From positions 124,001 to 188,000 of the IMG/VR virus record IMGVR_UViG_3300035703_000010: a stretch of 64,000 nucleotides of DNA, one strand, 5' to 3'. The translations under genes and the position numbers were made by a program. Shown here piece after piece: positions 9,116 to 38,943 of the stretch; position 1 is the stretch's first letter; each line of letters starts with the position of its first letter. A model generated the notes under the pieces. The model saw only the letters and a list, made by a program, of their open reading frames with translations. It searched no databases and was not told where the DNA came from.

Positions 9116-9557
9116 ACGAATCACAAATCCAATTTGGGTCAAAGTTTTAACAGATGATGATTCCCAAATACCAGCTTATCAAACACCAGGTTCTGCTGCT
9201 TGTGATTTAAAGTCAACAGATGATGTTGTCATCCCACCAGGATCTAGGTTTGTGGTTGGAACTGGCATCAAATTAGAGATTCCTAGCGGATTTGGAGCAA
9301 TGGTTTGTTCTAGATCAGGATTAGCTGCAAAGAACGGTATTCAAGTATTGAATGCTCCTGGTATCATTGACACCGACTATAGAGGAGAGATAAAGGTAAT
9401 TCTGCACAACTCAGGTCAGTCAGAGTTTATTGTTAAAAAAGGCGATAGGATTGCACAACTTTTATTTTTTCCCATTTTTCAAGCCATCTTTCAAAAGGCA
9501 AAGTCAGTAACTGAAACCGTCAGAGGCGAAGGCGGATTTGGTAGCACAGGAGTTTGA
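9108..9557 (+). CDS. dut: Trimeric dUTPase
   Basis: GSAACDL, SRSGLA, GIIDTDYRGEI, GDRIAQL, RGEGGFGSTG. Likely ATG at 9108. Confidence 0.95.
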   Translation: MSERITNPIWVKVLTDDDSQIPAYQTPGSAACDLKSTDDVVIPPGSRFVVGTGIKLEIPSGFGAMVCSRSGLAAKNGIQVLNAPGIIDTDYRGEIKVILHNSGQSEFIVKKGDRIAQLLFFPIFQAIFQKAKSVTETVRGEGGFGSTGV

Positions 9558-16488: not shown

Positions 16489-16569
16489 ATGACGTTTTCT
16501 TTGGCGTCAGTAGCTGTTATTTTTTCCCTAATAGTTGTTTTTAAATTTTTTATCTCTGAGGATGATTGA
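16489..16569 (+). CDS. Possible 26-aa single-TM peptide (not in ORF track)
   Basis: MTFSLASVAVIFSLIVVFKFFISEDD*. Fills the gap exactly, and its TGA overlaps the next ATG (TGATG). Confidence 0.35.
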   Translation: MTFSLASVAVIFSLIVVFKFFISEDD

Positions 16570-16934
16570 TGGATAAGCTTCAAGAAATGTGGAATCAACA
16601 AGAAAAATTTATGGAATTGCTTCAATCACGAAGAGGATTTCCTGAATTTCCACTTGACATGAAATCAAAAACCGGTCAAAAGTTCCTCAAAGGAATTACT
16701 CATGAATGTATGCATGAGTTATTTGAAGCTAATCTTCTTTTGAAAAACTCAAAAGACCATAGAGCTACTGACGTAAAAGAATTTAATCGTGAAGATTACA
16801 TTGAAGAACTTGTCGATGCTCTTCACTACTTTTTTGAAATTGCAATTTGTAGTGGTGTTACTATGGATGAACTTCATGAAGCATACATGAAGAAAGGTAG
16901 AATTAACATCAATAGAATTGAAAATGGATATTAA
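16569..16934 (+). CDS. All-alpha (dimeric dUTPase / T4 gp56 dCTPase-like) dNTP pyrophosphatase
   Basis: HELFEA...EELVDALHYF...NINRIENGY pattern of the all-alpha NTP-PPase superfamily. Confidence 0.7.
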   Translation: MDKLQEMWNQQEKFMELLQSRRGFPEFPLDMKSKTGQKFLKGITHECMHELFEANLLLKNSKDHRATDVKEFNREDYIEELVDALHYFFEIAICSGVTMDELHEAYMKKGRININRIENGY

Positions 16935-26311: not shown

Positions 26312-29005
26312 ATGACTACAAAAGTTCCTTCACGATTCGTAGGCCTTCACAGCCACTCGGGGTTTAGTACCTTTGATGGACTTGATTATCCGCAAGAACA
26401 CATCGATTACGTTCTAGAGAACGGTATGGATGCCTGGTCGTTGACTGACCATGGTCACATGAACGGATTCTGCCATGCATATCTTCATGCCGAGAAGATG
26501 AAAAAATCAGGTAAGAACTTCAAGTTCATTCCTGGCTGCGAGATGTACGTCCATCCTGATCTAAAACAATGGCAGATCGATCTCGATAAGTCGAGAGAAA
26601 AACCGATCAAGGACGAATCTATCCTCACACCCCTCGCTGCGATCGTTGACGGTAACGATGAAACGACTGACATCGGTACCGATGAAGCCGCATTGACCAT
26701 CGAAAACGAGGAGGAAACAAAATCAGGCAAGTACAACGACCCGATCAAACGTCGGCATCATCTCGTTGTCCTACCGAAAACATCAATTGGCCTACAAAGG
26801 TTATTCCATCTAGTTTCTCGAGGTTATTTGGAGGGCTTCTATAGGTTCCCACGAGTTGATTATGCGATGTTGAAGGAAGCCGCAAAGGGAGGTCATCTCA
26901 TGATTTCAACAGCATGCCTAGGTGGTGTGCTGAGCTATGACGTCTTCTCAAAGGTTCAACGCGTCAAGTTCGATGACCTATCACACAAACTTCTTGATGA
27001 TAGGAGCTTGCTTGAGTCAACCTTGCTTGAGATGGGTAACACATATGACAAATTGGTTAATGCTGTAGGACGAGACAATGTTTGCCTTGAGCTACAATTC
27101 AACAAACTTCCAGCCCAACATCTTGTTAACCGCGCAATTCTTGAATTTGCGAAGAAGAATTCATTGACTGATCGACTCGTTGTAACTTGCGATTCTCATT
27201 ATTCTCGTCCAGACAACTGGAAAGAGCGTGAGATCTACAAGAAGCTAGGATGGCTTAATTACCAAAACTTCGATCCGAACATGCTGCCGAAGTCGAAGGA
27301 CGATCTGAAGTGCGAGTTGTATCCAAAGAACGCACCTCAGGTCTGGGATTCCTACCTGTCCACGTCTGAAGACATGTCATTCTATGATGATGATGTTGTT
27401 CGTGAAGCAATCGAGCGGACTCATGACATCGTCCACAATGAAATCGGCGATATCCATCCTGATAAGGAGATGAAGCTACCATCCTACGTCATCCCTGAAG
27501 GATTCACTGAAGATAAAGCATTGGTCGATGCATGTAAGAAAGGTCTCATTTGGCGAGGGCTCGATGACAAGCCTGAGTACATCGAACGTATCAAGTATGA
27601 GCTATCGATCATCAAAGGTAAGAAGTTCTCACGCTACTTCTTGACGATGAAGGCGATCATGGATTTGGCACGAGAACATATGTTGATCGGGCCAGGTCGC
27701 GGATCTGCTGCAGGTTCTCTCGTTGCTTATGTTCTTGGTGTTACTAACCTTGACCCTATTGAATACGACTTATCATTTGAACGCTTCCTTAACCCATCTC
27801 GACAAGGCGCTCCTGATATCGATTCTGACATTGGAGATCGCGATAAACTAATCGAGCTCATGCGCGAAAACTTTGGTAATAACAATGTTATCCCAATTTC
27901 TAACTACAATACTTTTAAGTTAAAGAGCCTCATTAAAGACATCGCGCGGTTCTACAACATCCCATTTGAAGAAGTCAATGCAGCCTTAGCTCCCGTTGAA
28001 GATGACGTAAAGAAAGAGGTCTTTAAGCCAGGAGTTGATAAGAATCTTTTCGTCTTGACTTATGAAGATGCGATGAAGTATTCAAAGTCGATGCAAGACT
28101 TCGTCGCAGCGCATCCAGAGGTTGCAGAACCTATCGAGATCTTATTCAAACAAAACCGATCTCTCGGCCGACATGCGGGTGGCGTCATCGTGTCGGAGAA
28201 CGTTGCAGAGAGGATGCCTCTTATTCTTGCTCGTGGCGAACCTCAAACCCCATGGGTCGAAGGTATGCACTATAAACACCTAGAAGAGTTCGGCTGGATC
28301 AAATTCGATCTACTAGGTCTTGAAACCCTGCGCATTATCGAACGAGCTATCTACCTGATTCTGCAACGTCGAGAAGGTGTAGCAAATCCAACATTTAAGG
28401 ATGTGAAGGCTTGGTTCGACAAGCATATGGATCCTAAGAATATCGATCTCAATGATCAAAGGGTGTATGAATACGTTTATCATGAGGGACGATTTGCTGG
28501 TGTGTTCCAGTGTACGCAACCTGGTGCTCAACGATTGTTCACTAAGGCAAAGCCTCGCAGCATCATCGACATTGCAACTTTGACATCGATCTATCGTCCT
28601 GGTCCTCTAGCGGCCAATGTCGATAAGATCTATATCGGCGCCAAGAACGAACCTGATAAGATCGATTACCAGCACCCTTTGATCAAGAAGGTGCTTGAGT
28701 CTACATACGGATGTTTACATGGATCAACTGTTATTACAACTGATATTGGAGATATTACGATTGAAAAAATCGTAGAAGATCAGTTAGTCGGAACAAAATT
28801 GCCATCTTTTAACGAAGAATCTTGCGAGATTGAACAAGACGAAATTGTTGCTGCAGTTTGCACTGGCGTTCAAGAGACTCTAACGATTGAACTTGAAGAT
28901 GGAAAAACTATTCGTTTAACATCAGATCATAGAGTGTACACAACTAGAGGCTGGGTCGAGGCTGGAGATTTGACTGCAGAAGACGAAATTTTTGGAATTG
29001 AATAG
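26312..29005 (+). CDS. dnaE: DNA polymerase III alpha, N-terminal part, fused to the N-half of a split intein
   Basis: PHP domain (HSHS, TDHG, GCE, DSHY), GPGRGSAAGS, catalytic PDIDSD, KFDLLGL, RPGP. Ends STYG|CLHGST (IntN from residue 801). Confidence 0.95.
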   Translation: MTTKVPSRFVGLHSHSGFSTFDGLDYPQEHIDYVLENGMDAWSLTDHGHMNGFCHAYLHAEKMKKSGKNFKFIPGCEMYVHPDLKQWQIDLDKSREKPIKDESILTPLAAIVDGNDETTDIGTDEAALTIENEEETKSGKYNDPIKRRHHLVVLPKTSIGLQRLFHLVSRGYLEGFYRFPRVDYAMLKEAAKGGHLMISTACLGGVLSYDVFSKVQRVKFDDLSHKLLDDRSLLESTLLEMGNTYDKLVNAVGRDNVCLELQFNKLPAQHLVNRAILEFAKKNSLTDRLVVTCDSHYSRPDNWKEREIYKKLGWLNYQNFDPNMLPKSKDDLKCELYPKNAPQVWDSYLSTSEDMSFYDDDVVREAIERTHDIVHNEIGDIHPDKEMKLPSYVIPEGFTEDKALVDACKKGLIWRGLDDKPEYIERIKYELSIIKGKKFSRYFLTMKAIMDLAREHMLIGPGRGSAAGSLVAYVLGVTNLDPIEYDLSFERFLNPSRQGAPDIDSDIGDRDKLIELMRENFGNNNVIPISNYNTFKLKSLIKDIARFYNIPFEEVNAALAPVEDDVKKEVFKPGVDKNLFVLTYEDAMKYSKSMQDFVAAHPEVAEPIEILFKQNRSLGRHAGGVIVSENVAERMPLILARGEPQTPWVEGMHYKHLEEFGWIKFDLLGLETLRIIERAIYLILQRREGVANPTFKDVKAWFDKHMDPKNIDLNDQRVYEYVYHEGRFAGVFQCTQPGAQRLFTKAKPRSIIDIATLTSIYRPGPLAANVDKIYIGAKNEPDKIDYQHPLIKKVLESTYGCLHGSTVITTDIGDITIEKIVEDQLVGTKLPSFNEESCEIEQDEIVAAVCTGVQETLTIELEDGKTIRLTSDHRVYTTRGWVEAGDLTAEDEIFGIE
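28712..29005 (+). mobile_element. Split intein N-part (IntN, 97 aa)
   Basis: Starts with Cys1 (CLHGSTVI), has block B IRLTSDHRVYTTRGW, then a TAG stop with no block F/G. Confidence 0.93.
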
Positions 29006-29048
29006 ACATATGGGTATATTTATCTTCCAAGAAAGAGGCTCTTGGAAG

Positions 29049-29954
29049 ATGAGAACTTGTGAATGTTGTGATAAAAAATTTGTTTATACAGGACCAAAAG
29101 GAAAAAATTATCCCGCAAAGACTTGCAGCGCAGAATGTTATAAGATATTAAGATCAAAAAAAATATCTCAATCAAACATCGATAGAAGGATACACGAAAA
29201 AGTAGAAAAGATTTGCGAAATTTGTGGTACGATAATCATAACAAATGATACAGAGAACCAACGCATAACTTGCTCTAAGAAATGTCATTCTAAGAGATTA
29301 TCGAAATTATACGCAGGAAGAAAAATAACTGAAGAGTGGCGACAAAATCAGAATAAGTCAAAGACTAAAGACAAAATTGTAAAGCATGGAGATTTTTCAT
29401 GTGATAAATGTCAAAAACATTTTGATACCAACACTTCGCTTAGATCTCATAGATCATATTGTACTCCTGGAAATGAAGGTCATATTTGTTGCGAAATATG
29501 CAATAAGAGTTTTTCTACGCGAGGGTACAAGATCCATTTTAAGAGTCATGATTTAATATGGAGATCGAAGACTACAAGTTCTCTTCAAAAATCTCTACTA
29601 ACAAGAACGAAATGTCAGACTACCTCTAAATCAGAGTTAGAATTTTTTGAAAAATTAAAGTCTTTGTTGGGTGATGATGTTGTACACAAGTTTAAAATTG
29701 AAGGAATTACTCATGAATATGATTTTTTTGTTCCTTCAAAAAATGTTATCATAGAGTTTGATGGTGATTATTGGCATGGCAATAAGAAGCTATACGAGTT
29801 ATCTTCTAGAATGAAACGTCAATATCAGATTGATAAAGTGTGGAATGAAAAAGCAATAGCTGCTGGGTATAGAATAATAAGAGTTTGGGCATCAGAGTCA
29901 AAAGATTTTAAGTTGGAAAATTATGTTAACACCCTTGAAAATAAAGTCGATTAA
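29049..29954 (+). mobile_element. Free-standing Vsr/DUF559-like homing endonuclease with N-terminal zinc fingers, lying between the intein halves
   Basis: C-terminal SKSELEF...YDFFVPSKNVIIEFDGDYWHG. N-terminal CxxC..CS..C motifs and C2H2-like fingers. ATG at 29049 after RBS AGAGG. Confidence 0.85.
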
Positions 29955-31206
29955 ACGTGACGTACCTGCAAAAGTTTATGATATTCAAACCAAGAAAAAT
30001 CATAACTTCATTGCAAATGGCTTCTTAGTTCATAATTGCATAATTTTTCAAGAGCAAACTATGAAGTTATGTTCTGTCGTTGCTGGGTTCCCGGAGGCTG
30101 AAACTGACACGATTCGTAGAAACATCATGAAGCGTTCTGCGTCTAAAAAGGATGCAGCTGCTGCAGACGCGAAGAAGGCAAAAGAAGACTTCGTCGCCGG
30201 AGCGATGAAGAACGGTGTGCCTGAAAAGGTGGCTGATGAACTATACGAGAAGATTCTCTTCTTCTCTGGCTACGGCTTTAACGCTTCTCACGCAGTGTCT
30301 TACGCAATTGATTCATATTACTGTGCCTGGCTTCTCACCTACTTTGAGGAGGAATGGCTATGCGCTTACCTCGAGTCGATGTCAGGAAATGATGAAAAGC
30401 GTGCTAAGGCATTCTCTGAAGTCAAGGCATTAGGTTACAAGATCGTCAACATCGACATCAACTATGCAACGAAGAGCTGGACGATCCTGGATGGTAAACG
30501 ATTCATGCCTAGCTTCCTTTCATGTAAGGGTGTAGGGGAATCCGCAGTAGAAGAAATCATGGAAAATCGTCCGTATAAATCAGTGGAAGATATGTTATGG
30601 AATGAGGATGGGTCATGGAGGCATTCCAAGTTCAATAAACGTGCCTTGGAGGCCCTCATTGCAATTAAGGCATTTGATTCTCTTGATTGTATCGGTCATG
30701 ATAGGACTTTCACCGGATACAAACACATGAGTGAGATCTTGATCAACAGAAACGGCGATATCAAGAAACATACAAAGAAGAATCCGACTGCAGGAATCGA
30801 AGCATTCCGTGAAGCTTTGATCGATACGAAGAACATGGATGAATGGTCCAGATCAGAATTGGTAGATAACAGCATAAAGTATCTCGGTTCATTCAACGCT
30901 GCGATGCTGATGCCAGAAGAGATCTTACAAAAGCTTGAGAGCAGAGGAGTCAAGTCTGTTGATGATTTATCTGAAAGCGACATCTATTGGTTTATCGTTT
31001 CTGATACAAAGCCTAAGAAAACGAAGACAGGAAAAAACTATTTGTTGTTAACGATTACTGGGCTTGGAGGACAAAACCATAGGTTGTTCTGTTGGGGATG
31101 GAATGGCGAAACAGAAATTCCCAAGTACAGCGTTTGCCTTTCAGAAATCACCGTAGATGGCTACGGTAATAAAACTTTCATGAGTAAGATTAAAGTCCTT
31201 GATTGA
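29923..31206 (+). CDS. dnaE: Split intein C-part (38 aa, 29923-30036) fused to the DnaE C-terminal part
   Basis: MLTPLKIKSIK...VYDIQTKKNHNFIANGFLVHN|CIIFQEQ, then DnaE motifs YGFNASHAVSY and HhH KGVGESAV. Confidence 0.95.
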   Translation: MLTPLKIKSIKRDVPAKVYDIQTKKNHNFIANGFLVHNCIIFQEQTMKLCSVVAGFPEAETDTIRRNIMKRSASKKDAAAADAKKAKEDFVAGAMKNGVPEKVADELYEKILFFSGYGFNASHAVSYAIDSYYCAWLLTYFEEEWLCAYLESMSGNDEKRAKAFSEVKALGYKIVNIDINYATKSWTILDGKRFMPSFLSCKGVGESAVEEIMENRPYKSVEDMLWNEDGSWRHSKFNKRALEALIAIKAFDSLDCIGHDRTFTGYKHMSEILINRNGDIKKHTKKNPTAGIEAFREALIDTKNMDEWSRSELVDNSIKYLGSFNAAMLMPEEILQKLESRGVKSVDDLSESDIYWFIVSDTKPKKTKTGKNYLLLTITGLGGQNHRLFCWGWNGETEIPKYSVCLSEITVDGYGNKTFMSKIKVLD

Positions 31207-31217
31207 AGAGGTATAAT

Positions 31218-31739
31218 ATGGGAATGGTTATTTTATTTGACGGGCCTGACAAGGTCGGTAAAACTGAAATGGTCAAAGAACTTTCTAAAAGGCTAAACGT
31301 TCCTTCGTTTAAGAATGAATCTGAATGGAAAGCTTTTTCTGATGATCCTGATTATTTCGTTAACGCTTTAAGATACGGTGATCCATACTTTTATAATTTT
31401 CTAAAATCTACAGGGACATCAGTCATTCTAGATAGATCATATCCTTCAGAATGGGTGTACTCTAAAGTTTACGGAAGAAAGACTGATCAAGAAGCGTTGA
31501 GGCATATCGACTCTTTGGCTGCATCGTTTGGAGTAAAGATTATTGTTCCATATCGTACTTCTTACGATGGATTGCATGATGATATGCATGACATAGATTC
31601 TGAACAAATGAAAAAGATTTCAGACGTTTATATCGAGTTTATTGAATGGACGAAGTGTAATGTCCTACGTCTGTGTGTAGATTCAGAAGACCTTGATTGG
31701 GAAATGAAAACCATTCTAAAATTTATTGGGAAAAATTGA
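31218..31739 (+). CDS. Second deoxynucleoside-monophosphate kinase (thymidylate-kinase-like)
   Basis: P-loop FDGPDKVGKT and ILDRSYPSEWVY. Confidence 0.8.
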   Translation: MGMVILFDGPDKVGKTEMVKELSKRLNVPSFKNESEWKAFSDDPDYFVNALRYGDPYFYNFLKSTGTSVILDRSYPSEWVYSKVYGRKTDQEALRHIDSLAASFGVKIIVPYRTSYDGLHDDMHDIDSEQMKKISDVYIEFIEWTKCNVLRLCVDSEDLDWEMKTILKFIGKN

Positions 31740-31743
31740 TATT

Positions 31744-32769
31744 ATGAAACTAGGAATCAGTTATTGGGGATTTTGTGAGCCATTTGAAGCATCTAAAGAG
31801 GCAAAGACTCCTGATGGTCATCGTTACGGTCGGCCTATCATGGTAGATGCCTTACTTAATCAAGGGCATGAAGTGTATGCGCTGCAGGAAAGAAGAGAAT
31901 CTACTCCATATCCTGGAATCACATATGACATGGGATTTCCTGATATTGACGTTCTATTTGTAGAATGGCGTTGGAAGACATACAAGAATTCTGGACCAAA
32001 CAAGTTTGAAAAAGATTTGGACAGACAGTTTGAACTATTGACTCATTATCATGGAAAGATTCCTGTCGTTATTTGGGATTGTGATTATAAAGTCACACAC
32101 TTAGATGAAATGATGTGGCCTGAAGCGATTATCGCAGATCCAGCTTTTGAGCCCAGGTATCTTACAAGAAAACGAGAAAGAATAATGTTCTGGACGGATT
32201 GGAAAAAGCTTCTTCCAGCTGTTTCTACATCATTTGAATATGGGTATGTAGGAAATAACTATGAGCGTCCTCAAGCTTTTGAAAAGTATTATTCTTTTCC
32301 GTCGTCGACTCTTCGCAATTATGGAATTCAAACGACAGTTCATGGAAATTGGTTGGAAGTTTCACCAGAAAGAGAATCTCCGAAAGTATTGATTTCTTCT
32401 CACCCTAGTATTTCATTTGCTCAAAGATTGAATTTCTATGAATCGATGAAGAGATTAAACTCATTTATTTGTACGACACATATTACAAAACCAGAATATG
32501 CTCAAAGAGGTTTTGCTTCTCCTAGATATGTTGAGAATATCGTTTCGAACGTGCCAGCTTTGGTTCCAAAAGAATTTTTGAAGTCGAATCTATTAGGGAA
32601 AGACTGGGCAGTTGAAGGTGGAGATTCTGTCATTGAAAAAGTCAAATTAATTTTTTCAATGAATTTAGAAGAAAGAAATTCGTTAATTTTAGAACAGGAA
32701 AATAATTTAAAATCTAGCGGTGTATTTTCAGTAAGTAATGTTGTAGATTTTCTTGAGTCGGTTAAGTGA
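31744..32769 (+). CDS. GT-B glycosyltransferase, T4 beta-glucosyltransferase-like
   Basis: The C-terminal half YGYVGNNYER...TTVHGNW...KPEYAQRGFASPRYVENIVSNVPALVPKEF resembles, from memory, T4 BGT IYGG..R...EFFGN...KNYNDNFITLRVWETMASDAVMLIDEEF. Confidence 0.65.
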   Translation: MKLGISYWGFCEPFEASKEAKTPDGHRYGRPIMVDALLNQGHEVYALQERRESTPYPGITYDMGFPDIDVLFVEWRWKTYKNSGPNKFEKDLDRQFELLTHYHGKIPVVIWDCDYKVTHLDEMMWPEAIIADPAFEPRYLTRKRERIMFWTDWKKLLPAVSTSFEYGYVGNNYERPQAFEKYYSFPSSTLRNYGIQTTVHGNWLEVSPERESPKVLISSHPSISFAQRLNFYESMKRLNSFICTTHITKPEYAQRGFASPRYVENIVSNVPALVPKEFLKSNLLGKDWAVEGGDSVIEKVKLIFSMNLEERNSLILEQENNLKSSGVFSVSNVVDFLESVK

Positions 32770-32776
32770 GGAAAAA

Positions 32777-33772
32777 ATGAAAGTATTAATTACAGGTATT
32801 GCTGGTCTTCTTGGTGCAAACTTTTCTCGTTATTTGCTTGATAAAGGCTATAAAGTAGTTGGAATCGATGATTTAAGCGGCGGGTATGAAGATTCAGTAC
32901 CAAAGGATGCTACTTTTTATAAGCTTGACTTGACCGACCAAAAGAAGGTTGACGAGATTTTTAACGCAGAAAAGCCTGATTACGTTTTTCATTTTGCAGC
33001 ATATGCAGCTGAAGGTCTTAGTCCATTCATAAGAAATTACAATTACACAAATAATGTATTAGCTTCAACCAATGTAATCAACGCTTGCGTAAATCATGAT
33101 GTAAAGAAAATCATCTTTACGTCGTCAATGGCTGTTTATGGAGTAGGAAATCCTCCATTTACCGAAGAGCAACTACCAACGCCTGAAGATCCATATGGTA
33201 TTGCAAAATATGCAGTTGAAATGGATCTGAAGTTGGCTCATGAAATGTTTGGTCTTCGATACAGCATTGTTCGACCGCACAATGTAGTTGGAATCTACCA
33301 GAACATTTGGGATCGTTATCGCAACGTAATTGGAATTTGGATTCGAAAAGCAATGAATGGCGAACCACTTTCGATTTTTGGAGATGGTACACAAGTTCGA
33401 GCATTTTCAGACATTAAGTTTTATTTGGAACCATTTGAAAAATTAATGGATTCTTACGATGGAGAAATCTTCAACATCGGTGCTGACAAACATTACACAA
33501 TTAATGAAGCTGCAGACACAGTAATCGGCGTTGCAAAAGAGCTAGGAATTAACGCAACTAAAGTTCATCTAGAAAAGAGGAATGAAGTTCATACAGCATA
33601 TTGTGATCATACTAAGGCTCATAAGCTCTTGTCTTTTGAGGACAAAACAGATTTGCGAGAAACCGTTATGAAGATGTTTAAGTGGGCCATGGAACAGCCA
33701 AATCGTCCTACAAAGAGCATGAACTATGAAATTGAAAAGAACATGTATTCTTTTTGGAAGAACACAAAATGA
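32777..33772 (+). CDS. NAD-dependent NDP-sugar epimerase/dehydratase
   Basis: ITGIAGLLG, FTSSMAVYG, catalytic YGIAK, GDGTQVRAF. Confidence 0.92.
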   Translation: MKVLITGIAGLLGANFSRYLLDKGYKVVGIDDLSGGYEDSVPKDATFYKLDLTDQKKVDEIFNAEKPDYVFHFAAYAAEGLSPFIRNYNYTNNVLASTNVINACVNHDVKKIIFTSSMAVYGVGNPPFTEEQLPTPEDPYGIAKYAVEMDLKLAHEMFGLRYSIVRPHNVVGIYQNIWDRYRNVIGIWIRKAMNGEPLSIFGDGTQVRAFSDIKFYLEPFEKLMDSYDGEIFNIGADKHYTINEAADTVIGVAKELGINATKVHLEKRNEVHTAYCDHTKAHKLLSFEDKTDLRETVMKMFKWAMEQPNRPTKSMNYEIEKNMYSFWKNTK

Positions 33773-34548
33773 TCACGAATTTATCTTTTCCTGAAAATTT
33801 AAAAGATAGAGAGAAATTTATTTTTGATCAAGTTTTGTTAGGAAACTTTGATGCTTCATGGGTTCCTTTAACCTATGATATTTCTGGTAAAAAAGTTATT
33901 TTGAACGTTATGTCAGACGCGCTAAAAGTTGGAGGAATTAGAGTAAACGTCTCTGCGTTCCTCCAACAACAGCTAGCAGATGTTTTTGATGCTTCTTTGT
34001 TAACTGCGTTAGTTGCAGATTTGATGTACGTTCACGCGTCGAATATCCTAAATCCAGTTCCACAACCGATATCATCAACAGTGTCTTCTATGATATCTCA
34101 TGATGATAAAGTGACTAAACAATTGAAGTCTTATAATGGCGGAATAGTTTCTACAGTGGGAAAACATTGGATTTTAGATAAAAAAATAGATCAGCAACCT
34201 AGTAAAGCTTGCAATTATGGATGGCATTTTACAGGATCTAATTTTCAAGGAATTAATGGATTTCCTTCTACAACATTACAAAAAACGTTAGATGGTAAAC
34301 CAATCAAAGTGATTCAGCCGAATGCTACTGCTCATGATGCAAAGCATTCTGATTATTCACAAATTTGTCAATTGGTTTCTCAACAATGTTGGATTAATGG
34401 AGTAGAACATAGATTTTCTGATCTATTGCAAGATTCTTCATTGTGTAATTTGGTCAACCACAATGGTACATTAAAAAATACTAGACAACCTGGAGTTCAA
34501 AAGATTTCTGGCCAAGTTGTGTTATTTCCAACAACAATTTCACCTTGA
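33769..34548 (+). CDS. Hypothetical protein
   Basis: 259-aa ORF coupled (ATGA overlap) to the epimerase. Conserved-looking VGKHW, NYGWH and HSDYSQ motifs. Confidence 0.6.
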   Translation: MITNLSFPENLKDREKFIFDQVLLGNFDASWVPLTYDISGKKVILNVMSDALKVGGIRVNVSAFLQQQLADVFDASLLTALVADLMYVHASNILNPVPQPISSTVSSMISHDDKVTKQLKSYNGGIVSTVGKHWILDKKIDQQPSKACNYGWHFTGSNFQGINGFPSTTLQKTLDGKPIKVIQPNATAHDAKHSDYSQICQLVSQQCWINGVEHRFSDLLQDSSLCNLVNHNGTLKNTRQPGVQKISGQVVLFPTTISP

Positions 34549-34555
34549 GGATATT

Positions 34556-34753
34556 ATGCCAACTTATGAATATCAATGCGAATCTTGTTCATTTTTTATG
34601 GAAAAAGTTCAATCAATAAAGGATGATCCTCTATCTGATTGTCCTCATTGTAATAAAAACTGCTTAAAACGCTTGATTTCAGTAGGAGGAGGATTTACTT
34701 TAAAGGGTGGAGGTTGGTACAAGGATCTTTATTCTTCTACTCCTTCGAAGTAG
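34556..34753 (+). CDS. FmdB-family zinc-ribbon protein
   Basis: MPTYEYQCESC...CPHC...LKRLIS..GFTLKGGGWY. Confidence 0.9.
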   Translation: MPTYEYQCESCSFFMEKVQSIKDDPLSDCPHCNKNCLKRLISVGGGFTLKGGGWYKDLYSSTPSK

Positions 34754-35456
34754 ATCCCAACTTTTTTACGATGTTTCTGCTTGTTCTAGCAGCAGGATGA
34801 GATGGTTTAATTAAATTATGTTCGTCTTCATCAATTTTTGACTCAAATTTAGGTTTGATTTCTCCTGTCTCACAATTCAATATTATGTTGTATCCACCTT
34901 TTCCAAGCTTTAAAGGCTCAGTTAATGTGGATAGATAATCATATCTTCCTGCATTTATCATTTCTTTGTCAAACCATTGTTCTAGAACGAAATTAGAAAC
35001 GCTGACATTAGTACCATTGACATTAATTTCATATGAATTGCTTTCAACAGGATCACATAATTCAACAGCTACAAATGTTTCGTCTCCTCTATGCGACCAT
35101 AAATTGATATAAGGATTATAAAAAGTTTCAAGTATTTCATGAGAAAGAACTACGGAGACGGATTTTGATCCAGATAATACCGTTCCTCCATTGTCTAAAA
35201 CAGGATTAACAAAAACTCTACCCCAAACTTTTCCATCTGGGTCTTGTGTGTGGTATCCTAATGCGCTAGCATGATCTGAATCATCCATTATCACCATTGG
35301 AAATCCATCGTTGCCTTCTATTTTTATTTCCCATGGTAGTCTTCCTAAAATAGGACATGCATGATCTCTAAGTTGAATTCTGCACGCCTCGACCATAAGT
35401 TCGACATCTTGAGGAGATATTCTGTTTGATTTGTTTATGACGTTGAAAGTTTTCAT
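34737..35456 (-). CDS. Putative zinc metallopeptidase-like protein
   Basis: ALGYH...SHEILE...ELCDPVE metal-binding pattern. Confidence 0.55.
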   Translation of the reverse strand: MKTFNVINKSNRISPQDVELMVEACRIQLRDHACPILGRLPWEIKIEGNDGFPMVIMDDSDHASALGYHTQDPDGKVWGRVFVNPVLDNGGTVLSGSKSVSVVLSHEILETFYNPYINLWSHRGDETFVAVELCDPVESNSYEINVNGTNVSVSNFVLEQWFDKEMINAGRYDYLSTLTEPLKLGKGGYNIILNCETGEIKPKFESKIDEDEHNLIKPSHPAARTSRNIVKKLGSTSKE

Positions 35457-35514: not shown

Positions 35515-36483
35515 ATGAAAACCAAGAAAGCACTATTAACAGGCGCAGCTGGATTTATTGGAAGCAACTTGGCAAAAGAACTTTTGTCTAAAGGCGTAGA
35601 CTTAGATGTTGTTGATGATCTTTCAAGCGGTCATGTAGAGTTTTTACCTCAGCAGCTTCAAGAAACGTTAATAAAAGAGGATTTTTCATCACAAAATGTT
35701 TTAGATTTGATTAAAAACAAAAAATATGATGCTGTTTTTCACATTGCAGCAATTCCTCGAGTCAGCTATTCTGTAGATTTTCCAGTACAAACAAATGACA
35801 ATAACGTATCTAAGACCCTGTCATTAATTGATGCTTGTAGAGGTAATGTAGGAAGATTTGTTTTTGCTTCTTCATCATCAGTGTACGGCGATACGAATAT
35901 TTTACCAACTCCTGTTACATGTGAAAAAAATCCTAAATCTCCATATGCATTACAAAAATCTATCATAGAAGATTATTTGAAAATTTATTACAATTTGTAT
36001 GGATTGGACTCTGCTTGCTTAAGGTTTTTTAACGTATTCGGTCCTCATCAGCTTGGAAATTCTCCGTATTCTACTGCTTTAGGGGCTTGGTTGACTGCAA
36101 TCCATTCTGGAAATCAAATGCGATCTGATGGAGACGGATCACAATCCAGAGATTTATGTTATGTTGATAACGTTGTTGACGTTTGTATAAGAGCAGCAGA
36201 GTCCCAACAAGAATTAAAAGCCGTTAAATTAAACGTAGCTTGCGGAGTAAGAACTACGAATAAAGAAATTCTTTCTTACCTTTTATCCAAATATCCAAAT
36301 GCAAAATATTATGATGCACCATGGAGACCAGGTGACGTAATGCATACATTAGCTGATATTTCTATGACAAAGGAAGTTTTAGGTTATGAGCCTTTAGTCC
36401 TTCCTTGGGAAGGGATTGATAAAACCATTAAATGGTATGATGAAAATTGGGATATGATTAAAACTCTAGGTCTTTCAAAATGA
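35515..36483 (+). CDS. Second NAD-dependent NDP-sugar epimerase (GalE/WbpP-like)
   Basis: TGAAGFIGS, FASSSSVYG, YALQK, LRFFNVFGP, GDGSQSRD. Confidence 0.92.
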   Translation: MKTKKALLTGAAGFIGSNLAKELLSKGVDLDVVDDLSSGHVEFLPQQLQETLIKEDFSSQNVLDLIKNKKYDAVFHIAAIPRVSYSVDFPVQTNDNNVSKTLSLIDACRGNVGRFVFASSSSVYGDTNILPTPVTCEKNPKSPYALQKSIIEDYLKIYYNLYGLDSACLRFFNVFGPHQLGNSPYSTALGAWLTAIHSGNQMRSDGDGSQSRDLCYVDNVVDVCIRAAESQQELKAVKLNVACGVRTTNKEILSYLLSKYPNAKYYDAPWRPGDVMHTLADISMTKEVLGYEPLVLPWEGIDKTIKWYDENWDMIKTLGLSK

Positions 36484-37481
36484 AAGTTTACGAGAATTTC
36501 ACTGAAGCTTACGTCGACATTGTCAAAGATGTCTATACAGAGCCTGAATTCATTTCGTCTCCTCGCGGAATGAAGATCAAGGAGATCTTGGGATACCAAT
36601 TCAAGATCCTTAATCCTCGAAACAGAATTCCTTATGTTCCTGGAAGAGAGCTGTCGATCCACTACATGATCGCAGAGCTTCTTTGGTATTTGAGCGGAAA
36701 TGATTCAACGGATTGGATCTCGAACTATTCTGCTTTCTGGTCAAAGATCTCAGATGACGGCAAGACGGCCAACAGCGCTTATGGCGCTCGTATTTTCAAG
36801 CCTCATGATAGAATCGCAGCTAAGGTAAAACAGGACTGGACCCAATGGAATTATGTCGTAAATGAACTAAAGTCCGACCCTGATTCTCGCCGTGCCGTTG
36901 TTCATATCAGGTCTCCGCAGGATTCCATTCTTGCTAGCCTTGATGTGCCGTGTACTTTATCTCTTCAATTCTTTTTGAGGAATGACAAGGTTCACATGGT
37001 AACATCCATGAGATCATCCGATGTTATCCTTGGTTTAGCTTATGATGTTCCAGCATTTACTATCTTCCAAGAACTTTTGGCTCTTCAACTTACTCTAGAG
37101 CTAGGTCGTCCTATTGGTCTTGGGACATACACTCATTTAAGCGCTTCTCTTCATTTGTACGAGAGGCATTTTAAAATGGCAGAAAAAATACTTGAGGAAG
37201 ATAAGAAGCAGGATTATAGAAATGTTTTAGAGATGCCTCCTATGCCTTCTATGCCTCCGCTTGATGATCTGATGGTAGCGGAACGTGAGATTAAAAAGTG
37301 TATGACGGTTCCTGTTCTTTCAAGGGCGATTAATAACATCAACTTGAAAAGTGATTATTGGAACGATTGGTGTAGAGTTTTAGCATCTCATAAAGCTATT
37401 AAACTAAACGATGAACAAGCTTGTAACGAATTACTTTCTAATACAAAATTTGAAGGATACAGGTATTTCATAAAATCATGA
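36480..37481 (+). CDS. Thymidylate-synthase-fold enzyme, probably dCMP hydroxymethylase (T4 gp42-like)
   Basis: AELLWYLSG, AYGARI, DPDSRRAV, catalytic PC158T, MRSSD. Residue 189 is Asp where ThyA has the dUMP-specifying Asn. Confidence 0.8.
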   Translation: MKVYENFTEAYVDIVKDVYTEPEFISSPRGMKIKEILGYQFKILNPRNRIPYVPGRELSIHYMIAELLWYLSGNDSTDWISNYSAFWSKISDDGKTANSAYGARIFKPHDRIAAKVKQDWTQWNYVVNELKSDPDSRRAVVHIRSPQDSILASLDVPCTLSLQFFLRNDKVHMVTSMRSSDVILGLAYDVPAFTIFQELLALQLTLELGRPIGLGTYTHLSASLHLYERHFKMAEKILEEDKKQDYRNVLEMPPMPSMPPLDDLMVAEREIKKCMTVPVLSRAINNINLKSDYWNDWCRVLASHKAIKLNDEQACNELLSNTKFEGYRYFIKS

Positions 37482-38056
37482 CTACGACATTTACTGTATT
37501 TTGTGGACCCATGTTTTCTGCTAAGACCACATCTTTGTTGTCTGTTTTAGACAGGTTTAAATATCAAGGTAAGAAGATTGCAGTTTTTAAACCCATGCTA
37601 GATGATCGATACAGTGTAGATAACATATCAACTCATGGAGGATGGAAAATTCCTGCAACTTGCGTAAAATTAGGAACCGATATTCTTGAGCATCTTGCAA
37701 ATATGGATGAAAATCCTAATGTAATTGCAGTAGATGAAGCTTTTATGATTCCTGGAGTTGCCGATGTTCTTATTTGGTTGTATCGAAGCGGTTATTCTAT
37801 CGTTGTTTCCAGTTTAGACTTGTCAGCAACTGGAAAGTCATTTAATGAAATCGAAAAAATGCTTCCTTGGGCAACTAAGGTCGAAAAACTAAGCGCAGTT
37901 TGTACAGTATGTAATAAAGATGCTTTTTACACATATAAAAAGCAAACAGGCGGAGATGAGATTGAAGTAGGAGGCGTTGAATTGTATGAGCCTAGATGTT
38001 CTAGATGCCATCCTATAATTCTAAATCAAGATAGAAATTATGCCATGAAGGATTGA
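37478..38056 (+). CDS. tdk: Thymidine kinase
   Basis: GPMFSAKT, FKPMLDDRY, IAVDEA, KLSAVCTVC, YEPRCSRC. Confidence 0.9.
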   Translation: MTTTFTVFCGPMFSAKTTSLLSVLDRFKYQGKKIAVFKPMLDDRYSVDNISTHGGWKIPATCVKLGTDILEHLANMDENPNVIAVDEAFMIPGVADVLIWLYRSGYSIVVSSLDLSATGKSFNEIEKMLPWATKVEKLSAVCTVCNKDAFYTYKKQTGGDEIEVGGVELYEPRCSRCHPIILNQDRNYAMKD

Positions 38057-38059: not shown

Positions 38060-38539
38060 ATGTCAAATTCTTTAGAACGTAGTATTCAAAAATTGAGCGT
38101 TTTCATGAAAATGTGCAATGAATTGTCTACGCTGTCATATGATGACAAATATAAAGTTGCTTCTATAATAATAACGAAGGATTATAGAGAAGTTTGTGCT
38201 ATAGGATATAATGGAGGATACAAAGGCGGTCCTAATAAAAGATCATCTTTAGAACAAGGAAAATCAGGGTTTTTGCATGCTGAAGAGAATGCATTGTTCC
38301 ATTTATGCAAACCTTATGAACTTAGAGGTGATCTTTTGATGCTATGCACTCATAAACCATGTTCAATGTGCGCAAGAAGAATTGTCAATAGTGGGATTAA
38401 GAACATTATCTATTATTCTGATTATATTGATGCAGAAGCCGCTTCCGATGATATTTTTAAGGTTACTGGAACTTCTTGTGTTAAATTTGATCAACTTTTG
38501 CAGAATCCAGCTATTATCCTGAATATTCTAGAGTCCTGA
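38060..38539 (+). CDS. dCMP deaminase family protein
   Basis: AIGYNG, HAEENAL, PCSMCA. Confidence 0.88.
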   Translation: MSNSLERSIQKLSVFMKMCNELSTLSYDDKYKVASIIITKDYREVCAIGYNGGYKGGPNKRSSLEQGKSGFLHAEENALFHLCKPYELRGDLLMLCTHKPCSMCARRIVNSGIKNIIYYSDYIDAEAASDDIFKVTGTSCVKFDQLLQNPAIILNILES

Positions 38540-38933: not shown

Positions 38934-38943
38934 TAATAACATC

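What the first reader, a model, noticed from the sequence alone, without database searches (positions are those of the whole stretch)
36480..37481. Thymidylate synthase homologue has Asp at the substrate-specificity position
The sequence reads M177-R-S-S-D-V-I-L-G-L-A-Y-D189 (GAT at 37044-37046). E. coli ThyA has RSCDVFLGLPFN177, and this Asn selects dUMP; T4 dCMP hydroxymethylase has Asp at this position. The catalytic Cys158 is in PCT, without the following His of ThyA. An automatic 'thyA' call would probably be wrong. The product could be 5-hydroxymethyl-, 5-methyl- or another 5-substituted dCMP.
Basis: partly seen in the sequence, partly recalled or inferred. Interest (0 to 1): 0.75.

Follow-up and report, generated by a model that had tools for sequence, protein, structure and literature searches.

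The report
Phage dCMP hydroxymethylase mislabelled thymidylate synthase
This gene of a freshwater jumbo phage looks like thymidylate synthase but has the active-site residues of a dCMP hydroxymethylase, and it sits among genes for making and probably sugar-coating 5-hydroxymethylcytosine DNA, a known way for phages to evade host restriction enzymes.

Summary
ORF 36480-37481 (+) encodes a 333-aa ThyA-fold protein with Cys158 in PCT and Asp189 (GAT 37044-37046) at the E. coli Asn177 position.

At every diagnostic position the residues match T4 gp42 dCMP hydroxymethylase:
- Asp at 143, which admits water and gives a hydroxymethyl product.
- Cys146 and Thr147.
- Arg126 and Ser167, the deoxyribose signature that MilA lacks.
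- Asp169 retained, so it is not a 5-hydroxy-dCMP synthase.
- Asp177.

All of these are invariant in 121 relatives of 55-95% identity. The fold matches MilA over the full length (TM 0.81-0.85), including MilA's extra C-terminal helical domain.

The phage makes dTMP separately, through ThyX followed by Tmk. It also has a T4 gp56-like NTP pyrophosphatase and a second kinase. Beside that kinase is a glycosyltransferase whose best structural match is T4 beta-glucosyltransferase.

In close relatives the same slot instead holds a T4-type alpha-glucosyltransferase, a TobZ-like O-carbamoyltransferase, or another predicted GT-B glycosyltransferase (language-model lead only). The first two act on 5hmC or belong to a family that does.

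Verdict: this is a dCMP hydroxymethylase feeding a (probably glycosylated) 5hmC-DNA pathway. It is a new, uncharacterised member of a known kind. Nothing has been shown biochemically.

The parts
36480..37481 (+). TS-fold protein, 333 aa, predicted dCMP hydroxymethylase (5hm-dCMP synthase). It has a TS core (about residues 1-245) and a MilA-like C-terminal helical domain (about 246-333).
37044..37046 (+). Codon GAT for Asp189, equivalent to E. coli Asn177, T4 Asp179 and MilA Asp186. This position determines cytosine specificity.
   Evidence: Invariant in 121 of 121 sequences. Role taken from PMC5175136, PMC8670742 and PMC13326640.
36951..36953 (+). Codon for Cys158, the catalytic nucleophile (E. 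coli C146). The next residue is Thr159, not His.
36942..36944 (+). Codon for Asp155, at the E. coli Leu143 position. An acidic residue here correlates with hydroxymethyl or hydroxyl products.
   Evidence: Rule from PMC13326640.
37020..37022 (+). Codon for Asp181, at the E. coli Asp169 position. It is retained; 5-hydroxy-dCMP synthases have Asn here.
   Evidence: Rule from PMC13326640.
36888..36890 (+). Codon for Arg137 (E. coli Arg126; MilA has Lys133). Together with Ser179 at 37014-37016 (E. coli Ser167; MilA has Ala176) it forms the deoxyribose-preference signature.
   Evidence: Mutagenesis in PMC5175136.
31203..31739 (+). Second, thymidylate-kinase-like P-loop kinase. Predicted to phosphorylate 5hm-dCMP. 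This role is inferred.
   Evidence: phrog_761 at 1.6e-13. Weak hits to TIGR00041, AAA_28 and PPK2. 31.5% identity to RB69 gp45, E 1e-5. Syntenic in relatives.
31726..32769 (+). GT-B glycosyltransferase. The probable start is Met at 31744, giving 341 aa. Predicted DNA 5hmC glycosyltransferase.
   Evidence: AF2 model pLDDT 94.4. Best structural match is T4 beta-glucosyltransferase: Z 23.4, TM 0.67-0.69 over the full length. Atlas score 0.97-0.98 to Glyco_trans_1_2 and T4-Gluco-transf clusters. Some homologues carry PF13524. Sequence-level comparison with T4 BGT is weak, probability 18%.
32753..33772 (+). SDR NAD-dependent nucleotide-sugar 4-epimerase-like protein (GalE-like).
   Evidence: PF01370 at 1.2e-50. 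TIGR01179 at 2e-42, below its cut-off. Best PDB hit is the UDP-glucose 4-epimerase 4zrm at 8.6e-46.
33754..34548 (+). Conserved 264-aa protein of unknown function inside the cluster.
   Evidence: No family hits. Atlas structural neighbours are all hypothetical proteins. 196 unnamed homologues. Syntenic in relatives.
34737..35456 (-). Conserved 239-aa protein of unknown function on the opposite strand. A 78-aa ORF at 34517-34753 (+) whose orthologues carry Zn_ribbon_8 lies beside it.
35515..36483 (+). SDR nucleotide-sugar 4-epimerase-like protein (WbgU/WbpP/TviC-like), translationally coupled to the TS homologue.
   Evidence: PF01370 at 7.6e-50. PDB hits: 6dnt at 1.6e-55, WbgU at 1.1e-47, WbpP at 7.5e-43. 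Adjacent to the TS homologue in most relatives.
37478..38056 (+). Thymidine kinase.
   Evidence: PF00265 at 1.7e-38.
38060..38539 (+). dCMP deaminase, which supplies dUMP for ThyX.
   Evidence: PF00383 at 1.2e-16 and phrog_174 at 1.2e-26.
14926..15585 (+). ThyX, the flavin-dependent thymidylate synthase. This is the phage's real dTMP synthase.
   Evidence: TIGR02170 at 109.2 bits, above the 87.9 cut-off. PF02511 at 6e-37, also present in all four related records.
15582..16178 (+). Thymidylate kinase (Tmk) next to ThyX.
   Evidence: PF02223 at 57.7 bits.
16566..16934 (+). All-alpha NTP pyrophosphatase related to T4 gp56 dCTPase/dUTPase. Candidate dCTPase.
   Evidence: PF08761 at 26 bits, above the 22.9 cut-off. 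BLASTP against T4 gp56: 32% over 56 aa, E 4e-7. hhalign probability 91%, E 1e-6. Orthologues in relatives.
9075..9557 (+). Trimeric dUTPase. Its presence makes the gp56-like enzyme redundant as a dUTPase.
   Evidence: PF00692 at 122.5 bits.
26312..31206 (+). DnaE-type (Pol III alpha) replicative polymerase, interrupted by an intein and a homing endonuclease. It would have to incorporate 5hm-dCTP.

Best explanation
The gene encodes a folate-dependent dCMP hydroxymethylase (5-hydroxymethyl-dCMP synthase) with MilA-type architecture. It is not a thymidylate synthase.

Proposed enzyme mechanism, inferred from residues conserved with T4 gp42, MilA and ThyA:
- Cys158 adds to C6 of dCMP.
- Asp189 reads and protonates the N3/N4 face of cytosine.
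- Arg29, Arg137', Arg138', Arg178 and Ser179 hold the 5'-phosphate of a 2'-deoxynucleotide.
- Methylene-THF donates CH2 to C5, with the Glu66/Tyr101 network acting in proton transfer.
- Asp155 replaces the water-excluding Leu143 of ThyA, so water attacks the exocyclic methylene instead of hydride transfer occurring. The products are 5hm-dCMP and THF, not DHF.

Proposed pathway (inferred):
- The gp56-like NTP pyrophosphatase (16566-16934) converts dCTP to dCMP.
- The hydroxymethylase makes 5hm-dCMP.
- The adjacent TMK-like kinase (31203-31739) and the host NDK raise it to 5hm-dCTP.
- The phage DnaE polymerase incorporates it.
- The BGT-like GT-B enzyme (31726-32769) then glycosylates 5hmC in DNA. 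The sugar may come from a UDP-sugar produced by the two phage 4-epimerases.
- dTTP is made in parallel by dCMP deaminase or TK, then ThyX, then Tmk.

The purpose would be protection of phage DNA from host restriction and related nucleases.
For: Shown by computation:
1. TS fold. PF00303 matches at 5.7e-31. The AF2 model has pLDDT 90.9 and matches MilA over the full length at TM 0.81-0.85 and 30-31% identity. ThyA structures reach only TM about 0.55 and cover the core alone.
2. First-shell residues equal T4 gp42 at D143, C146, T147, M165, S167, D169, G173, D177, W80 and Y94. They differ from ThyA (L143, H147, N177). They differ from Xp12 dCMP methylase (N143, P147) and from RB69 5-hydroxy-dCMP synthase (N169, V173). 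They also differ from the SPO1/SP10 dUMP hydroxymethylases (N177) and from MilA (K133, A176).
3. These residues are invariant in 121 of 121 family members.
4. A separate dTMP route exists. ThyX is above its equivalog cut-off and is followed by Tmk. ThyX and the TS homologue co-occur in all 5 records, including a complete 298-kb genome.
5. No DHFR was found in any of the 5 records, whereas Xp12 has DHFR beside its methylase.
6. A gp56-like NTP pyrophosphatase is present in addition to a true dUTPase.
7. Conserved synteny runs DnaE, kinase, a variable transferase slot, epimerase(s), TS homologue, TK, dCMP deaminase.
8. The slot holds different transferases in different genomes. Here it is a GT-B enzyme whose best structural match is T4 BGT (Z 23.4). 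In L034 it is a PF11440 T4-type alpha-glucosyltransferase, 38% identical to phage G gp313. In L006 it is a TobZ-family O-carbamoyltransferase. In L002 and L007 it is a second GT-B-like protein.

From the literature:
- A 5hmC carbamoyltransferase paired with an Asp177 TS homologue has been demonstrated experimentally (PMC8670742).
- The residue rules come from PMC13326640 and PMC5175136.
Against: - There is no biochemical or DNA-chemistry evidence for this phage or any member of its clade.
- The rule that an acidic residue at position 143 means a hydroxymethyl product is a correlation over few characterised enzymes. The authors themselves say it 'appears to correlate'.
- The protein is only 26% identical to T4 gp42, and the family tree is unresolved. 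Function therefore rests on active-site residues and gene context, not on orthology.
- The closest solved relative, MilA, uses CMP.
- The GT-like protein matches T4 BGT only structurally (hhalign probability 18%), and other GT-B enzymes score nearly as well (Z 21-22).
- The epimerase next to the TS homologue persists in relatives that carry a carbamoyltransferase instead of a GT. Its link to DNA glycosylation is therefore uncertain.
- The kinase's substrate is unknown.
- The record is only about 60% complete.
Confidence: 0.8

Rival explanations
1. It is a dCMP methyltransferase like that of phage Xp12. It would make 5-methyl-dCMP by reductive methyl transfer, so the phage DNA would carry 5mC.
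For: Asp at position 177 alone turns ThyA into a dCMP methylase (Liu & Santi 1992 and Hardy & Nalivaika 1992, cited in PMC8670742). Xp12's enzyme also has D177, S168, and a dCMP deaminase next door.
Against: Position 143 is Asp here, against Asn in Xp12 and Leu in ThyA. The C-terminus is a MilA-type helical domain placed away from the active site, not the ThyA/Xp12-type closing tail. No DHFR was found in 5 records including a complete genome, while Xp12 has one adjacent. The neighbouring transferases (AGT, O-carbamoyltransferase, BGT-like) need a hydroxyl acceptor.
Confidence: 0.06
2. It is a flavin-dependent 5-hydroxy-dCMP synthase of the RB69 gp48 / DLP3 gp80 type, whose product is then glycosylated through an ether link.
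For: It shares D177 and an acidic residue at 143. Those enzymes also have MilA as their best structural hit. The gene neighbourhood is similar: a TMK-like kinase, GT-B transferases and sugar-nucleotide genes (PMC13326640). The kinase is homologous to RB69 gp45.
Against: The diagnostic D169N change is absent: Asp181 is invariant in 121 of 121 sequences, and G173 is also kept, whereas RB69 has Val. Relatives carry a T4-type AGT and an O-carbamoyltransferase; the AGT is known to act on 5hmC and the carbamoyltransferase belongs to a family shown to do so.
Confidence: 0.04
3. It is a CMP (ribonucleotide) hydroxymethylase like MilA or BcmA, feeding a nucleoside or antivitamin product or an RNA modification rather than DNA.
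For: MilA is the closest solved relative by sequence (E 4e-45) and by structure (TM 0.81-0.85), and shares the extra C-terminal domain.
Against: Arg137 and Ser179 replace MilA's Lys133 and Ala176. The MilA A176S/K133R double mutant loses CMP activity and keeps dCMP activity (PMC5175136). No MilB-like N-glycosidase context was seen. The gene sits in a DNA replication and dNTP module.
Confidence: 0.03
4. It is an ordinary thymidylate synthase (ThyA), or a dUMP hydroxymethylase, as automatic annotation would say.
For: It matches Pfam PF00303. Relatives are named 'thymidylate synthase' by JGI and NCBI. TK and dCMP deaminase are adjacent.
Against: N177 is Asp, H147 is Thr and L143 is Asp. The score is far below all NCBIfam ThyA equivalog cut-offs. 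ThyX is already present in every related record. dUMP hydroxymethylases keep Asn177 (SPO1, SP10).
Confidence: 0.02

Closest known systems
T4 gp42 deoxycytidylate 5-hydroxymethyltransferase (EC 2.1.2.8; PDB 1B5E, 6A9B)
   Same: It has the same first-shell residues (D143, C146, T147, M165, S167, D169, G173, D177, W80, Y94) and the same deoxy-type Arg/Ser pair. The pathway logic is the same: gp56-like NTP pyrophosphatase, kinase, dCMP deaminase, TK and a BGT-like glycosyltransferase.
   Different: Only 26% identity (E 3e-17 pairwise). The query is 333 aa against 246 aa and has an extra C-terminal five-helix domain. The partner dTMP synthase is ThyX, not Td. The polymerase is DnaE-type, not family B. 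The kinase is TMK-like, not gp1.
MilA, CMP 5-hydroxymethylase of Streptomyces rimofaciens (PDB 5JNH, 5B6D, 5B6E)
   Same: It is the closest solved relative: E 4e-45, 30-31% identity, TM 0.81-0.85 over the full length. It shares the C-terminal helical domain and has Asp at positions 143 and 177 (PMC13326640).
   Different: MilA has Lys133 and Ala176, which give its ribonucleotide preference. The query has Arg137 and Ser179. MilA works in antibiotic biosynthesis in a bacterium, not in a phage dNTP module.
Metagenomic phage Asp177 TS homologues paired with 5hmC carbamoyltransferase (MetaGPA study, eLife 2021, PMC8670742)
   Same: Asp177 with a non-His residue at 147. The published study found co-occurrence with dCMP deaminase, an NTP pyrophosphatase and a carbamoyltransferase. 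Relative L006 of this lineage has exactly the TS homologue and carbamoyltransferase pairing.
   Different: The window's own genome carries a BGT-like GT-B enzyme in that slot instead of a carbamoyltransferase. I could not test identity with the published contigs.
Bacillus phage G gp319 and its neighbourhood (alpha-glucosyltransferase gp313, kinase gp315, deaminase gp317, DnaE gp329)
   Same: It is the closest isolate-phage homologue covering the full length: 33% identity, E 1e-56, same residue signature, same C-terminal extension and same gene neighbourhood. It belongs to the DnaE-type jumbo phage group.
   Different: Phage G gp319 is itself uncharacterised. In the tree it groups weakly with the SPO1/SP10 dUMP hydroxymethylases (support 89/82).
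RB69 gp48 / DLP3 gp80 5-hydroxy-dCMP synthases (PMC13326640)
   Same: TS fold, D177, an acidic residue at 143, an adjacent TMK-like kinase and GT-B transferases.
   Different: They have Asn169 and bind flavin. The query keeps Asp169 (D181).

Membership tests
ThyA thymidylate synthase (EC 2.1.1.45) | TS fold and PF00303 domain with a catalytic Cys | tested here: met
   PF00303 at 108 bits. C158 aligns to C146.
ThyA thymidylate synthase (EC 2.1.1.45) | Asn177 (uracil specificity), His147, and a hydrophobic Leu143 | tested here: not met
   The query has D189, T159 and D155 at these positions.
ThyA thymidylate synthase (EC 2.1.1.45) | Scores above curated equivalog thresholds | tested here: not met
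   The best NCBIfam ThyA model gives 93 bits against a cut-off of 327. All 7 models score below their cut-offs.
ThyA thymidylate synthase (EC 2.1.1.45) | Makes dTMP (complements thyA) | not testable with these tools
   This needs an experiment. A separate ThyX is present.
dCMP hydroxymethylase (T4 gp42 type, EC 2.1.2.8) | Catalytic Cys plus Asp at the Asn177 position | tested here: met
   C158 and D189, both invariant in the family.
dCMP hydroxymethylase (T4 gp42 type, EC 2.1.2.8) | Acidic residue at position 143, with Asp169 retained | tested here: met
   D155 and D181. Rule from PMC13326640.
dCMP hydroxymethylase (T4 gp42 type, EC 2.1.2.8) | Deoxyribonucleotide signature (Arg126' and Ser167) | tested here: met
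   R137 and S179. Mutagenesis in PMC5175136.
dCMP hydroxymethylase (T4 gp42 type, EC 2.1.2.8) | Pathway partners: dCTPase, a kinase, and a transferase acting on 5hmC | tested here: inconclusive
   Homologues are present: a gp56-like NTP pyrophosphatase, a TMK-like kinase and a BGT-like GT-B enzyme. AGT or carbamoyltransferase occupies the slot in relatives. Their substrates are not shown.
dCMP hydroxymethylase (T4 gp42 type, EC 2.1.2.8) | Converts dCMP and CH2-THF to 5hm-dCMP and THF | not testable with these tools
   An enzyme assay is needed.
dCMP hydroxymethylase (T4 gp42 type, EC 2.1.2.8) | Orthology with T4 gp42 (common clade) | tested here: inconclusive
   The tree is unresolved, with long branches. 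The query family forms its own clade at 88/95 support.
5-hydroxy-dCMP synthase (RB69 gp48 type) | Asn at the Asp169 position | tested here: not met
   D181 is invariant.
MilA/BcmA CMP hydroxymethylase | MilA architecture with an extra C-terminal five-helix domain | tested here: met
   Foldseek TM 0.81-0.85 over about 337 columns. The HMMER alignment runs to residue 311.
MilA/BcmA CMP hydroxymethylase | Lys133 and Ala176 (ribose preference) | tested here: not met
   The query has Arg137 and Ser179.
dCMP methyltransferase (Xp12 type) | Non-acidic residue at position 143, and DHF recycling by a linked DHFR | tested here: not met
   D155 here against N in Xp12. No PF00186 hit in 5 records.

The most novel reading that the evidence does not exclude
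This freshwater jumbo-phage lineage may use its MilA-type dCMP hydroxymethylase as a fixed entry point to a fast-evolving 'tailoring slot'. In this particular genome, a BGT-like transferase fed by two phage-encoded UDP-sugar 4-epimerases would put a non-glucose sugar on 5hmC. Candidates are galactose, GalNAc or a uronic sugar. Sister genomes would make alpha-glucosyl-, carbamoyl- or otherwise decorated 5hmC. That would be a not-yet-described cytosine hypermodification in this genome. A bolder version, which the evidence also does not exclude, is that the conserved 264-aa and 239-aa unknown proteins, or the second kinase, add further chemistry. One example would be phosphorylation of 5hmC in DNA, analogous to 5-hmdU DNA kinase.
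Probability: 0.25. Interest if true: 0.6.

Novelty: new member of a known kind. Interest (0 to 1): 0.4.

Why it matters
- **Annotation.** A family with more than 1,600 metagenomic homologues at E<=1e-10 is being labelled 'thymidylate synthase'. It most likely marks genomes with fully or partly replaced cytosine.
- **Practical consequences.** Such DNA resists many restriction enzymes and some Cas nucleases. It can also bias library preparation and base-calling, and so affect how these abundant freshwater jumbo phages are detected. This phage is nearly identical in at least 10 studies.
- **Biology.** The lineage shows a T4-like hmC pathway rebuilt from different parts: a MilA-architecture hydroxymethylase, ThyX, a TMK-like kinase and a DnaE polymerase.
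- **Enzyme sources.** Close relatives swap the 5hmC-tailoring enzyme. That is a compact natural example of arms-race diversification, and a source of new DNA-modifying enzymes for hmC mapping tools.

Tried and rejected
- **Phylogeny.** I built a tree with characterised enzymes (ThyA, T4 gp42, RB69 gp48, SPO1/SP10, others). The backbone was unresolved and long branches attracted each other. I could not use it to assign function. It did show that Asn/Asp switches occur within clades: phage G gp319 groups with the SPO1 dUMP hydroxymethylases.
- **MilA in the tree.** I could not add it, because no tool gave its sequence by reference.
- **Sequence tests of the GT-like ORF.** There was no Pfam, NCBIfam or PHROG hit, and a PDB profile search found nothing. 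hhalign against T4 BGT gave probability 18%. Only structure prediction resolved it.
- **PRA-PH/MazG family search in the own genome.** It found nothing. The orthologue was recovered by tblastn from relatives, then matched PF08761 and T4 gp56.
- **Other modification enzymes in the 204-kb record.** AGT, carbamoyltransferase, C5-methyltransferase and the 428-aa GT of relatives have no homologue there.
- **The 264-aa and 239-aa neighbours.** Their function stayed unknown.
- **Promoter and terminator scan.** It found no more sites than shuffled sequence gave.
- **Sequencing runs.** All holders are assembled contigs with no raw long reads, so there is no direct read-out of base modification.
Full report
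**1. Observation**

The window is bases 124001-188000 of a 204,651-bp IMG/VR virus record, estimated about 60% complete. ORF 36480-37481 (+) is open and encodes 333 aa. MRSSDVILGLAYD occupies residues 177-189, D189 is GAT at 37044-37046, and Cys158 lies in PCT.

The ORF's GC content (40%) is close to the window's (37.5%). Its start overlaps the stop of the upstream gene, and its stop overlaps the start of the downstream gene. That suggests translational coupling within an operon.

Pfam assigns PF00303 at 5.7e-31. Alignments to E. coli ThyA place D189 on N177, C158 on C146 and T159 on H147.

**2. Conservation**

A search of 5.8 billion proteins found 1,623 homologues at E<=1e-10. Many lie on contigs of 100-300 kb. 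Where a source names them, the name is 'thymidylate synthase'.

I aligned the query with the 120 best homologues (55-95% identity). The following residues are invariant:
- D155, P157, C158 and T159.
- R137, R138, R178 and S179.
- D181, G185 and D189.
- E66, Y101, H225 and Y227.

The Asp is therefore a selected feature of an active enzyme, not an error.

**3. What the active site says**

Three papers supply residue rules.

- *Positions 177 and 147.* In a metagenome association study these were the two positions that best separated TS homologues on cytosine-modified contigs from those on unmodified contigs. Asp177 marks dCMP use (PMC8670742).
- *Positions 143 and 169.* A bulky Leu143 in ThyA excludes water. 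T4-type hydroxymethylases and MilA have Asp or Glu there. 5-hydroxy-dCMP synthases (RB69 gp48, DLP3 gp80 and nine others tested) are marked by Asp169 changed to Asn (PMC13326640).
- *Ribose versus deoxyribose.* MilA prefers CMP because Lys133 and Ala176 replace the Arg and Ser of dNMP-using enzymes. The A176S/K133R double mutant loses CMP activity and keeps dCMP activity (PMC5175136).

I fetched characterised enzymes from public records and aligned them. Positions use E. coli ThyA numbering.

| Enzyme | 143 | 146 | 147 | 167 | 169 | 173 | 177 |
|---|---|---|---|---|---|---|---|
| E. coli ThyA | L | C | H | S | D | G | N |
| Xp12 dCMP methylase | N | C | P | S | D | G | D |
| T4 gp42 | D | C | T | S | D | G | D |
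| RB69 gp48 | E | C | T | S | N | V | D |
| SPO1 and SP10 dUMP hydroxymethylases | D | C | N | S | D | G | N |
| Query and its family | D | C | T | S | D | G | D |

The query also has Arg at 126 and 127. It therefore equals T4 gp42 at 10 of the 12 residues that lie within 6 Å of C5. It fails the signatures of ThyA, of the Xp12 methylase, of the 5-hydroxy-dCMP synthases, of the dUMP hydroxymethylases and of the ribo-specific MilA.

It also fails all seven NCBIfam ThyA equivalog cut-offs, with a best score of 93 bits against a cut-off of 327.

**4. Fold**

An AlphaFold2 model built on 32 family sequences has pLDDT 90.9. Its best matches in the PDB are the MilA structures, at TM 0.81-0.85 and 30-31% identity over about 337 columns. 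That coverage includes MilA's extra C-terminal five-helix domain. ThyA structures match only the core, at TM about 0.55 by the query's length.

By sequence, MilA is also the top solved hit at E 4e-45. E. coli ThyA scores 2e-19 and T4 gp42 scores 1e-12. Pairwise identity to T4 gp42 is only 26%. Identity to Bacillus phage G gp319 is 33% over the full length.

A maximum-likelihood tree left the backbone unresolved. The query family forms its own clade at 88/95 support. So this is a distinct MilA-architecture clade with a T4-like active site. Function rests on residues and gene context, not on orthology.

**5. The phage makes dTMP another way**

ORF 14926-15585 is ThyX. It scores 109.2 bits against TIGR02170, above the 87.9 cut-off. 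It is followed by a true thymidylate kinase at 15582-16178 (PF02223, 57.7 bits).

ThyX and the single TS homologue co-occur in the own record and in all four related IMG/VR records. One of these is a complete 297,894-bp genome with terminal repeats.

A published survey of jumbo phages reports that classic TS and ThyX are normally anticorrelated (PMC7824862). Their constant co-occurrence here fits a different job for the TS homologue.

No DHFR (PF00186) was found in any of the five records. Xp12, which makes 5-methyl-dCMP reductively, has DHFR and dCMP deaminase right beside its enzyme. Neither ThyX nor a hydroxymethylase produces DHF. This point is weak, because a host DHFR could serve.

**6. 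Pathway partners**

- *NTP pyrophosphatase.* ORF 16566-16934 is an all-alpha NTP pyrophosphatase (PF08761, 26 bits against a 22.9 cut-off). It is related to the C-terminal half of T4 gp56 dCTPase/dUTPase. BLASTP gives 32% identity over 56 aa at E 4e-7, and both proteins end in NGY. hhalign gives probability 91%. The phage also has a canonical trimeric dUTPase at 9075-9557 (122 bits), so a dCTPase role for the gp56-like protein is plausible. That role is inferred.
- *Second kinase.* ORF 31203-31739 is a second, TMK-like kinase (phrog_761, 1.6e-13). It is homologous to RB69 gp45, the 'nucleotide kinase' that sits beside RB69's TS homologue (E 1e-5; PMC13326640).
- *Glycosyltransferase.* ORF 31726-32769 has no sequence-family hit. 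Its model (pLDDT 94.4) has a GT-B fold. The best structural matches are the T4 beta-glucosyltransferase entries, at Z 23.4, 23.2 and 22.6 over the full length and TM up to 0.69. Other GT-B enzymes follow at Z about 21-22, and T4 alpha-glucosyltransferase at Z about 20.
- *Epimerases.* Two SDR enzymes flank the unknown genes. ORF 32753-33772 is GalE-like. ORF 35515-36483 is WbgU/WbpP/TviC-like.
- *Downstream genes.* Thymidine kinase and dCMP deaminase follow the TS homologue.

**7. Comparative context**

The gene order is conserved in relatives whose TS homologue is 56-80% identical. It runs DnaE, kinase, a variable slot, epimerase(s), TS homologue, TK, dCMP deaminase, SOD-like protein.

The slot differs between genomes:
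- The BGT-like GT (341-347 aa) is found here and in L003, L004 and L038.
- A 428-435-aa protein occupies the slot in L002, L007, L035, L036 and L037. A language-model search places it among GT4/GT1 glycosyltransferases. This is a lead only.
- L034 has a PF11440 T4-type alpha-glucosyltransferase, 38% identical to phage G gp313. It sits with a cytidylyltransferase-like protein and a C5 DNA methylase.
- L006, the complete genome, has a 588-aa TobZ/NovN-family O-carbamoyltransferase.
- L007 has a SAM methyltransferase in addition to the 434-aa protein.

T4 alpha-glucosyltransferase acts on the hydroxyl of 5hmC. A carbamoyltransferase of the same family, paired with an Asp177 TS homologue, was shown experimentally to carbamoylate 5hmC (PMC8670742). 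Finding such enzymes beside orthologues of this gene is the strongest contextual evidence that the product carries a hydroxymethyl group.

Phage G, a DnaE-type jumbo phage, has the same neighbourhood: alpha-glucosyltransferase, kinase, deaminase, TS homologue and DnaE.

**8. Mechanism and confidence**

I conclude that the gene encodes a dCMP hydroxymethylase, with confidence about 0.8. It would feed a T4-like pathway for 5hmC DNA that is probably glycosylated. That pathway is built from non-orthologous parts: ThyX instead of Td, a TMK-like kinase instead of gp1, and DnaE instead of a family B polymerase.

*Shown by computation:*
- The fold.
- The residue signature and its invariance across the family.
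- Co-occurrence with ThyX.
- The homologies of the partner genes.
- The conserved synteny and the variable slot.

*Inferred:*
- The chemistry of the reaction.
- The substrates of the kinase, the NTP pyrophosphatase, the GT and the epimerases.
- Whether cytosine is replaced fully or only in part.

*Caveats:*
- The position-143 rule is a correlation over few enzymes. I added one independent data point: the Xp12 methylase has Asn there.
- The epimerase beside the TS homologue persists in relatives that lack a GT in the slot.
- No member of this clade has been assayed.

**9. Rivals**

The rival explanations are a dCMP methylase (0.06), a 5-hydroxy-dCMP synthase (0.04), a CMP hydroxymethylase (0.03), and ThyA or a dUMP hydroxymethylase (0.02). 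Each fails at least one tested defining residue, as detailed in the rival and membership sections.

**10. Novelty**

Phage dCMP hydroxymethylases, the Asn-to-Asp rule and the pairing of Asp177 TS homologues with tailoring enzymes are all published.

The moderately interesting extras are:
- The MilA architecture combined with a deoxy-type signature.
- The rebuilt pathway.
- The tailoring slot that changes between close relatives.
- The possibility of a non-glucose sugar on 5hmC.

The phage is widespread. Near-identical sequence occurs in freshwater, aquatic and subsurface metagenomes from at least 10 studies.

Noticed in passing
window 26312-31206 (+): The dnaE (Pol III alpha) gene is split into three ORFs in three different frames. 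The first is the N-extein plus the intein N-splicing domain (26312-29005). The second is an HNH/homing-endonuclease-like ORF (28992-29954). The third is the intein C-splicing motif plus the C-extein (29923-31206). Relatives show three states: no insert (L007, L034, L037), one continuous ORF with an insert (L006, 1304 aa), or the same three-ORF layout (L032). This is a polymorphic intein. The three-ORF form may be a 'fractured gene' with a split intein and a free-standing endonuclease.
   Followed up: partly
window 50670-51920 (-): The phage encodes an isocitrate lyase (PF00463, 336 bits). This is an unusual auxiliary metabolic gene for a phage. Beside it is a 217-aa ORF with a weak citrate-lyase-ligase-like hit.
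   Followed up: no
window 25199-26203 (+) and 23241-24317 (+): A volactin-family actin-like protein (PF25216, 226 bits) and a GMP reductase/IMPDH-family enzyme (298 bits) lie just upstream of dnaE.
   Followed up: no
window 38908-39675, 42994-43752, 43749-44120 (+): An Fe/Mn superoxide-dismutase-like protein, a carbon-nitrogen hydrolase and a pterin-4a-carbinolamine dehydratase lie downstream of the TS homologue. All three are syntenic there across relatives.
   Followed up: no
window 33754-34548 (+), 34517-34753 (+), 34737-35456 (-): A conserved trio sits between the two epimerase genes: a 264-aa protein, a small protein whose orthologues carry Zn_ribbon_8, and a 239-aa protein on the opposite strand. 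None has a recognisable family. The 264-aa protein has 196 unnamed homologues and a confident Atlas model (pTM 0.89) whose neighbours are all hypothetical proteins.
   Followed up: partly
window 6936-14554 (+): A replication and nucleotide module: gp32-like SSB, RecA, trimeric dUTPase, 5'-3' exonuclease, DnaB helicase, and a ribonucleotide reductase with a TSCPD domain. A short family A polymerase-like ORF lies at 4744-5934.
   Followed up: no
window 48019-48897 (-), 49156-49719 (-), 55702-56286 (+), 61783-63306 (+): An FGE-sulfatase-domain protein, a ClpP-like protease, a SpoU-family RNA methyltransferase and a collagen-triple-helix-repeat protein.
   Followed up: no
L034 7796-9022 (relative carrying P0073): One relative carries a C5 DNA methyltransferase (PF00145) directly between its alpha-glucosyltransferase and the epimerase/TS-homologue pair. 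It may therefore combine 5mC and 5hmC chemistry.
   Followed up: no
Xp12 record MT664984, 44377-46195 (L041): The only TS homologue of phage Xp12, whose DNA is fully 5-methylcytosine, has Asn143, Pro147 and Asp177. It sits in a TS, dCMP deaminase, DHFR operon. This is a useful extra data point for the rule separating methylation from hydroxymethylation.
   Followed up: yes
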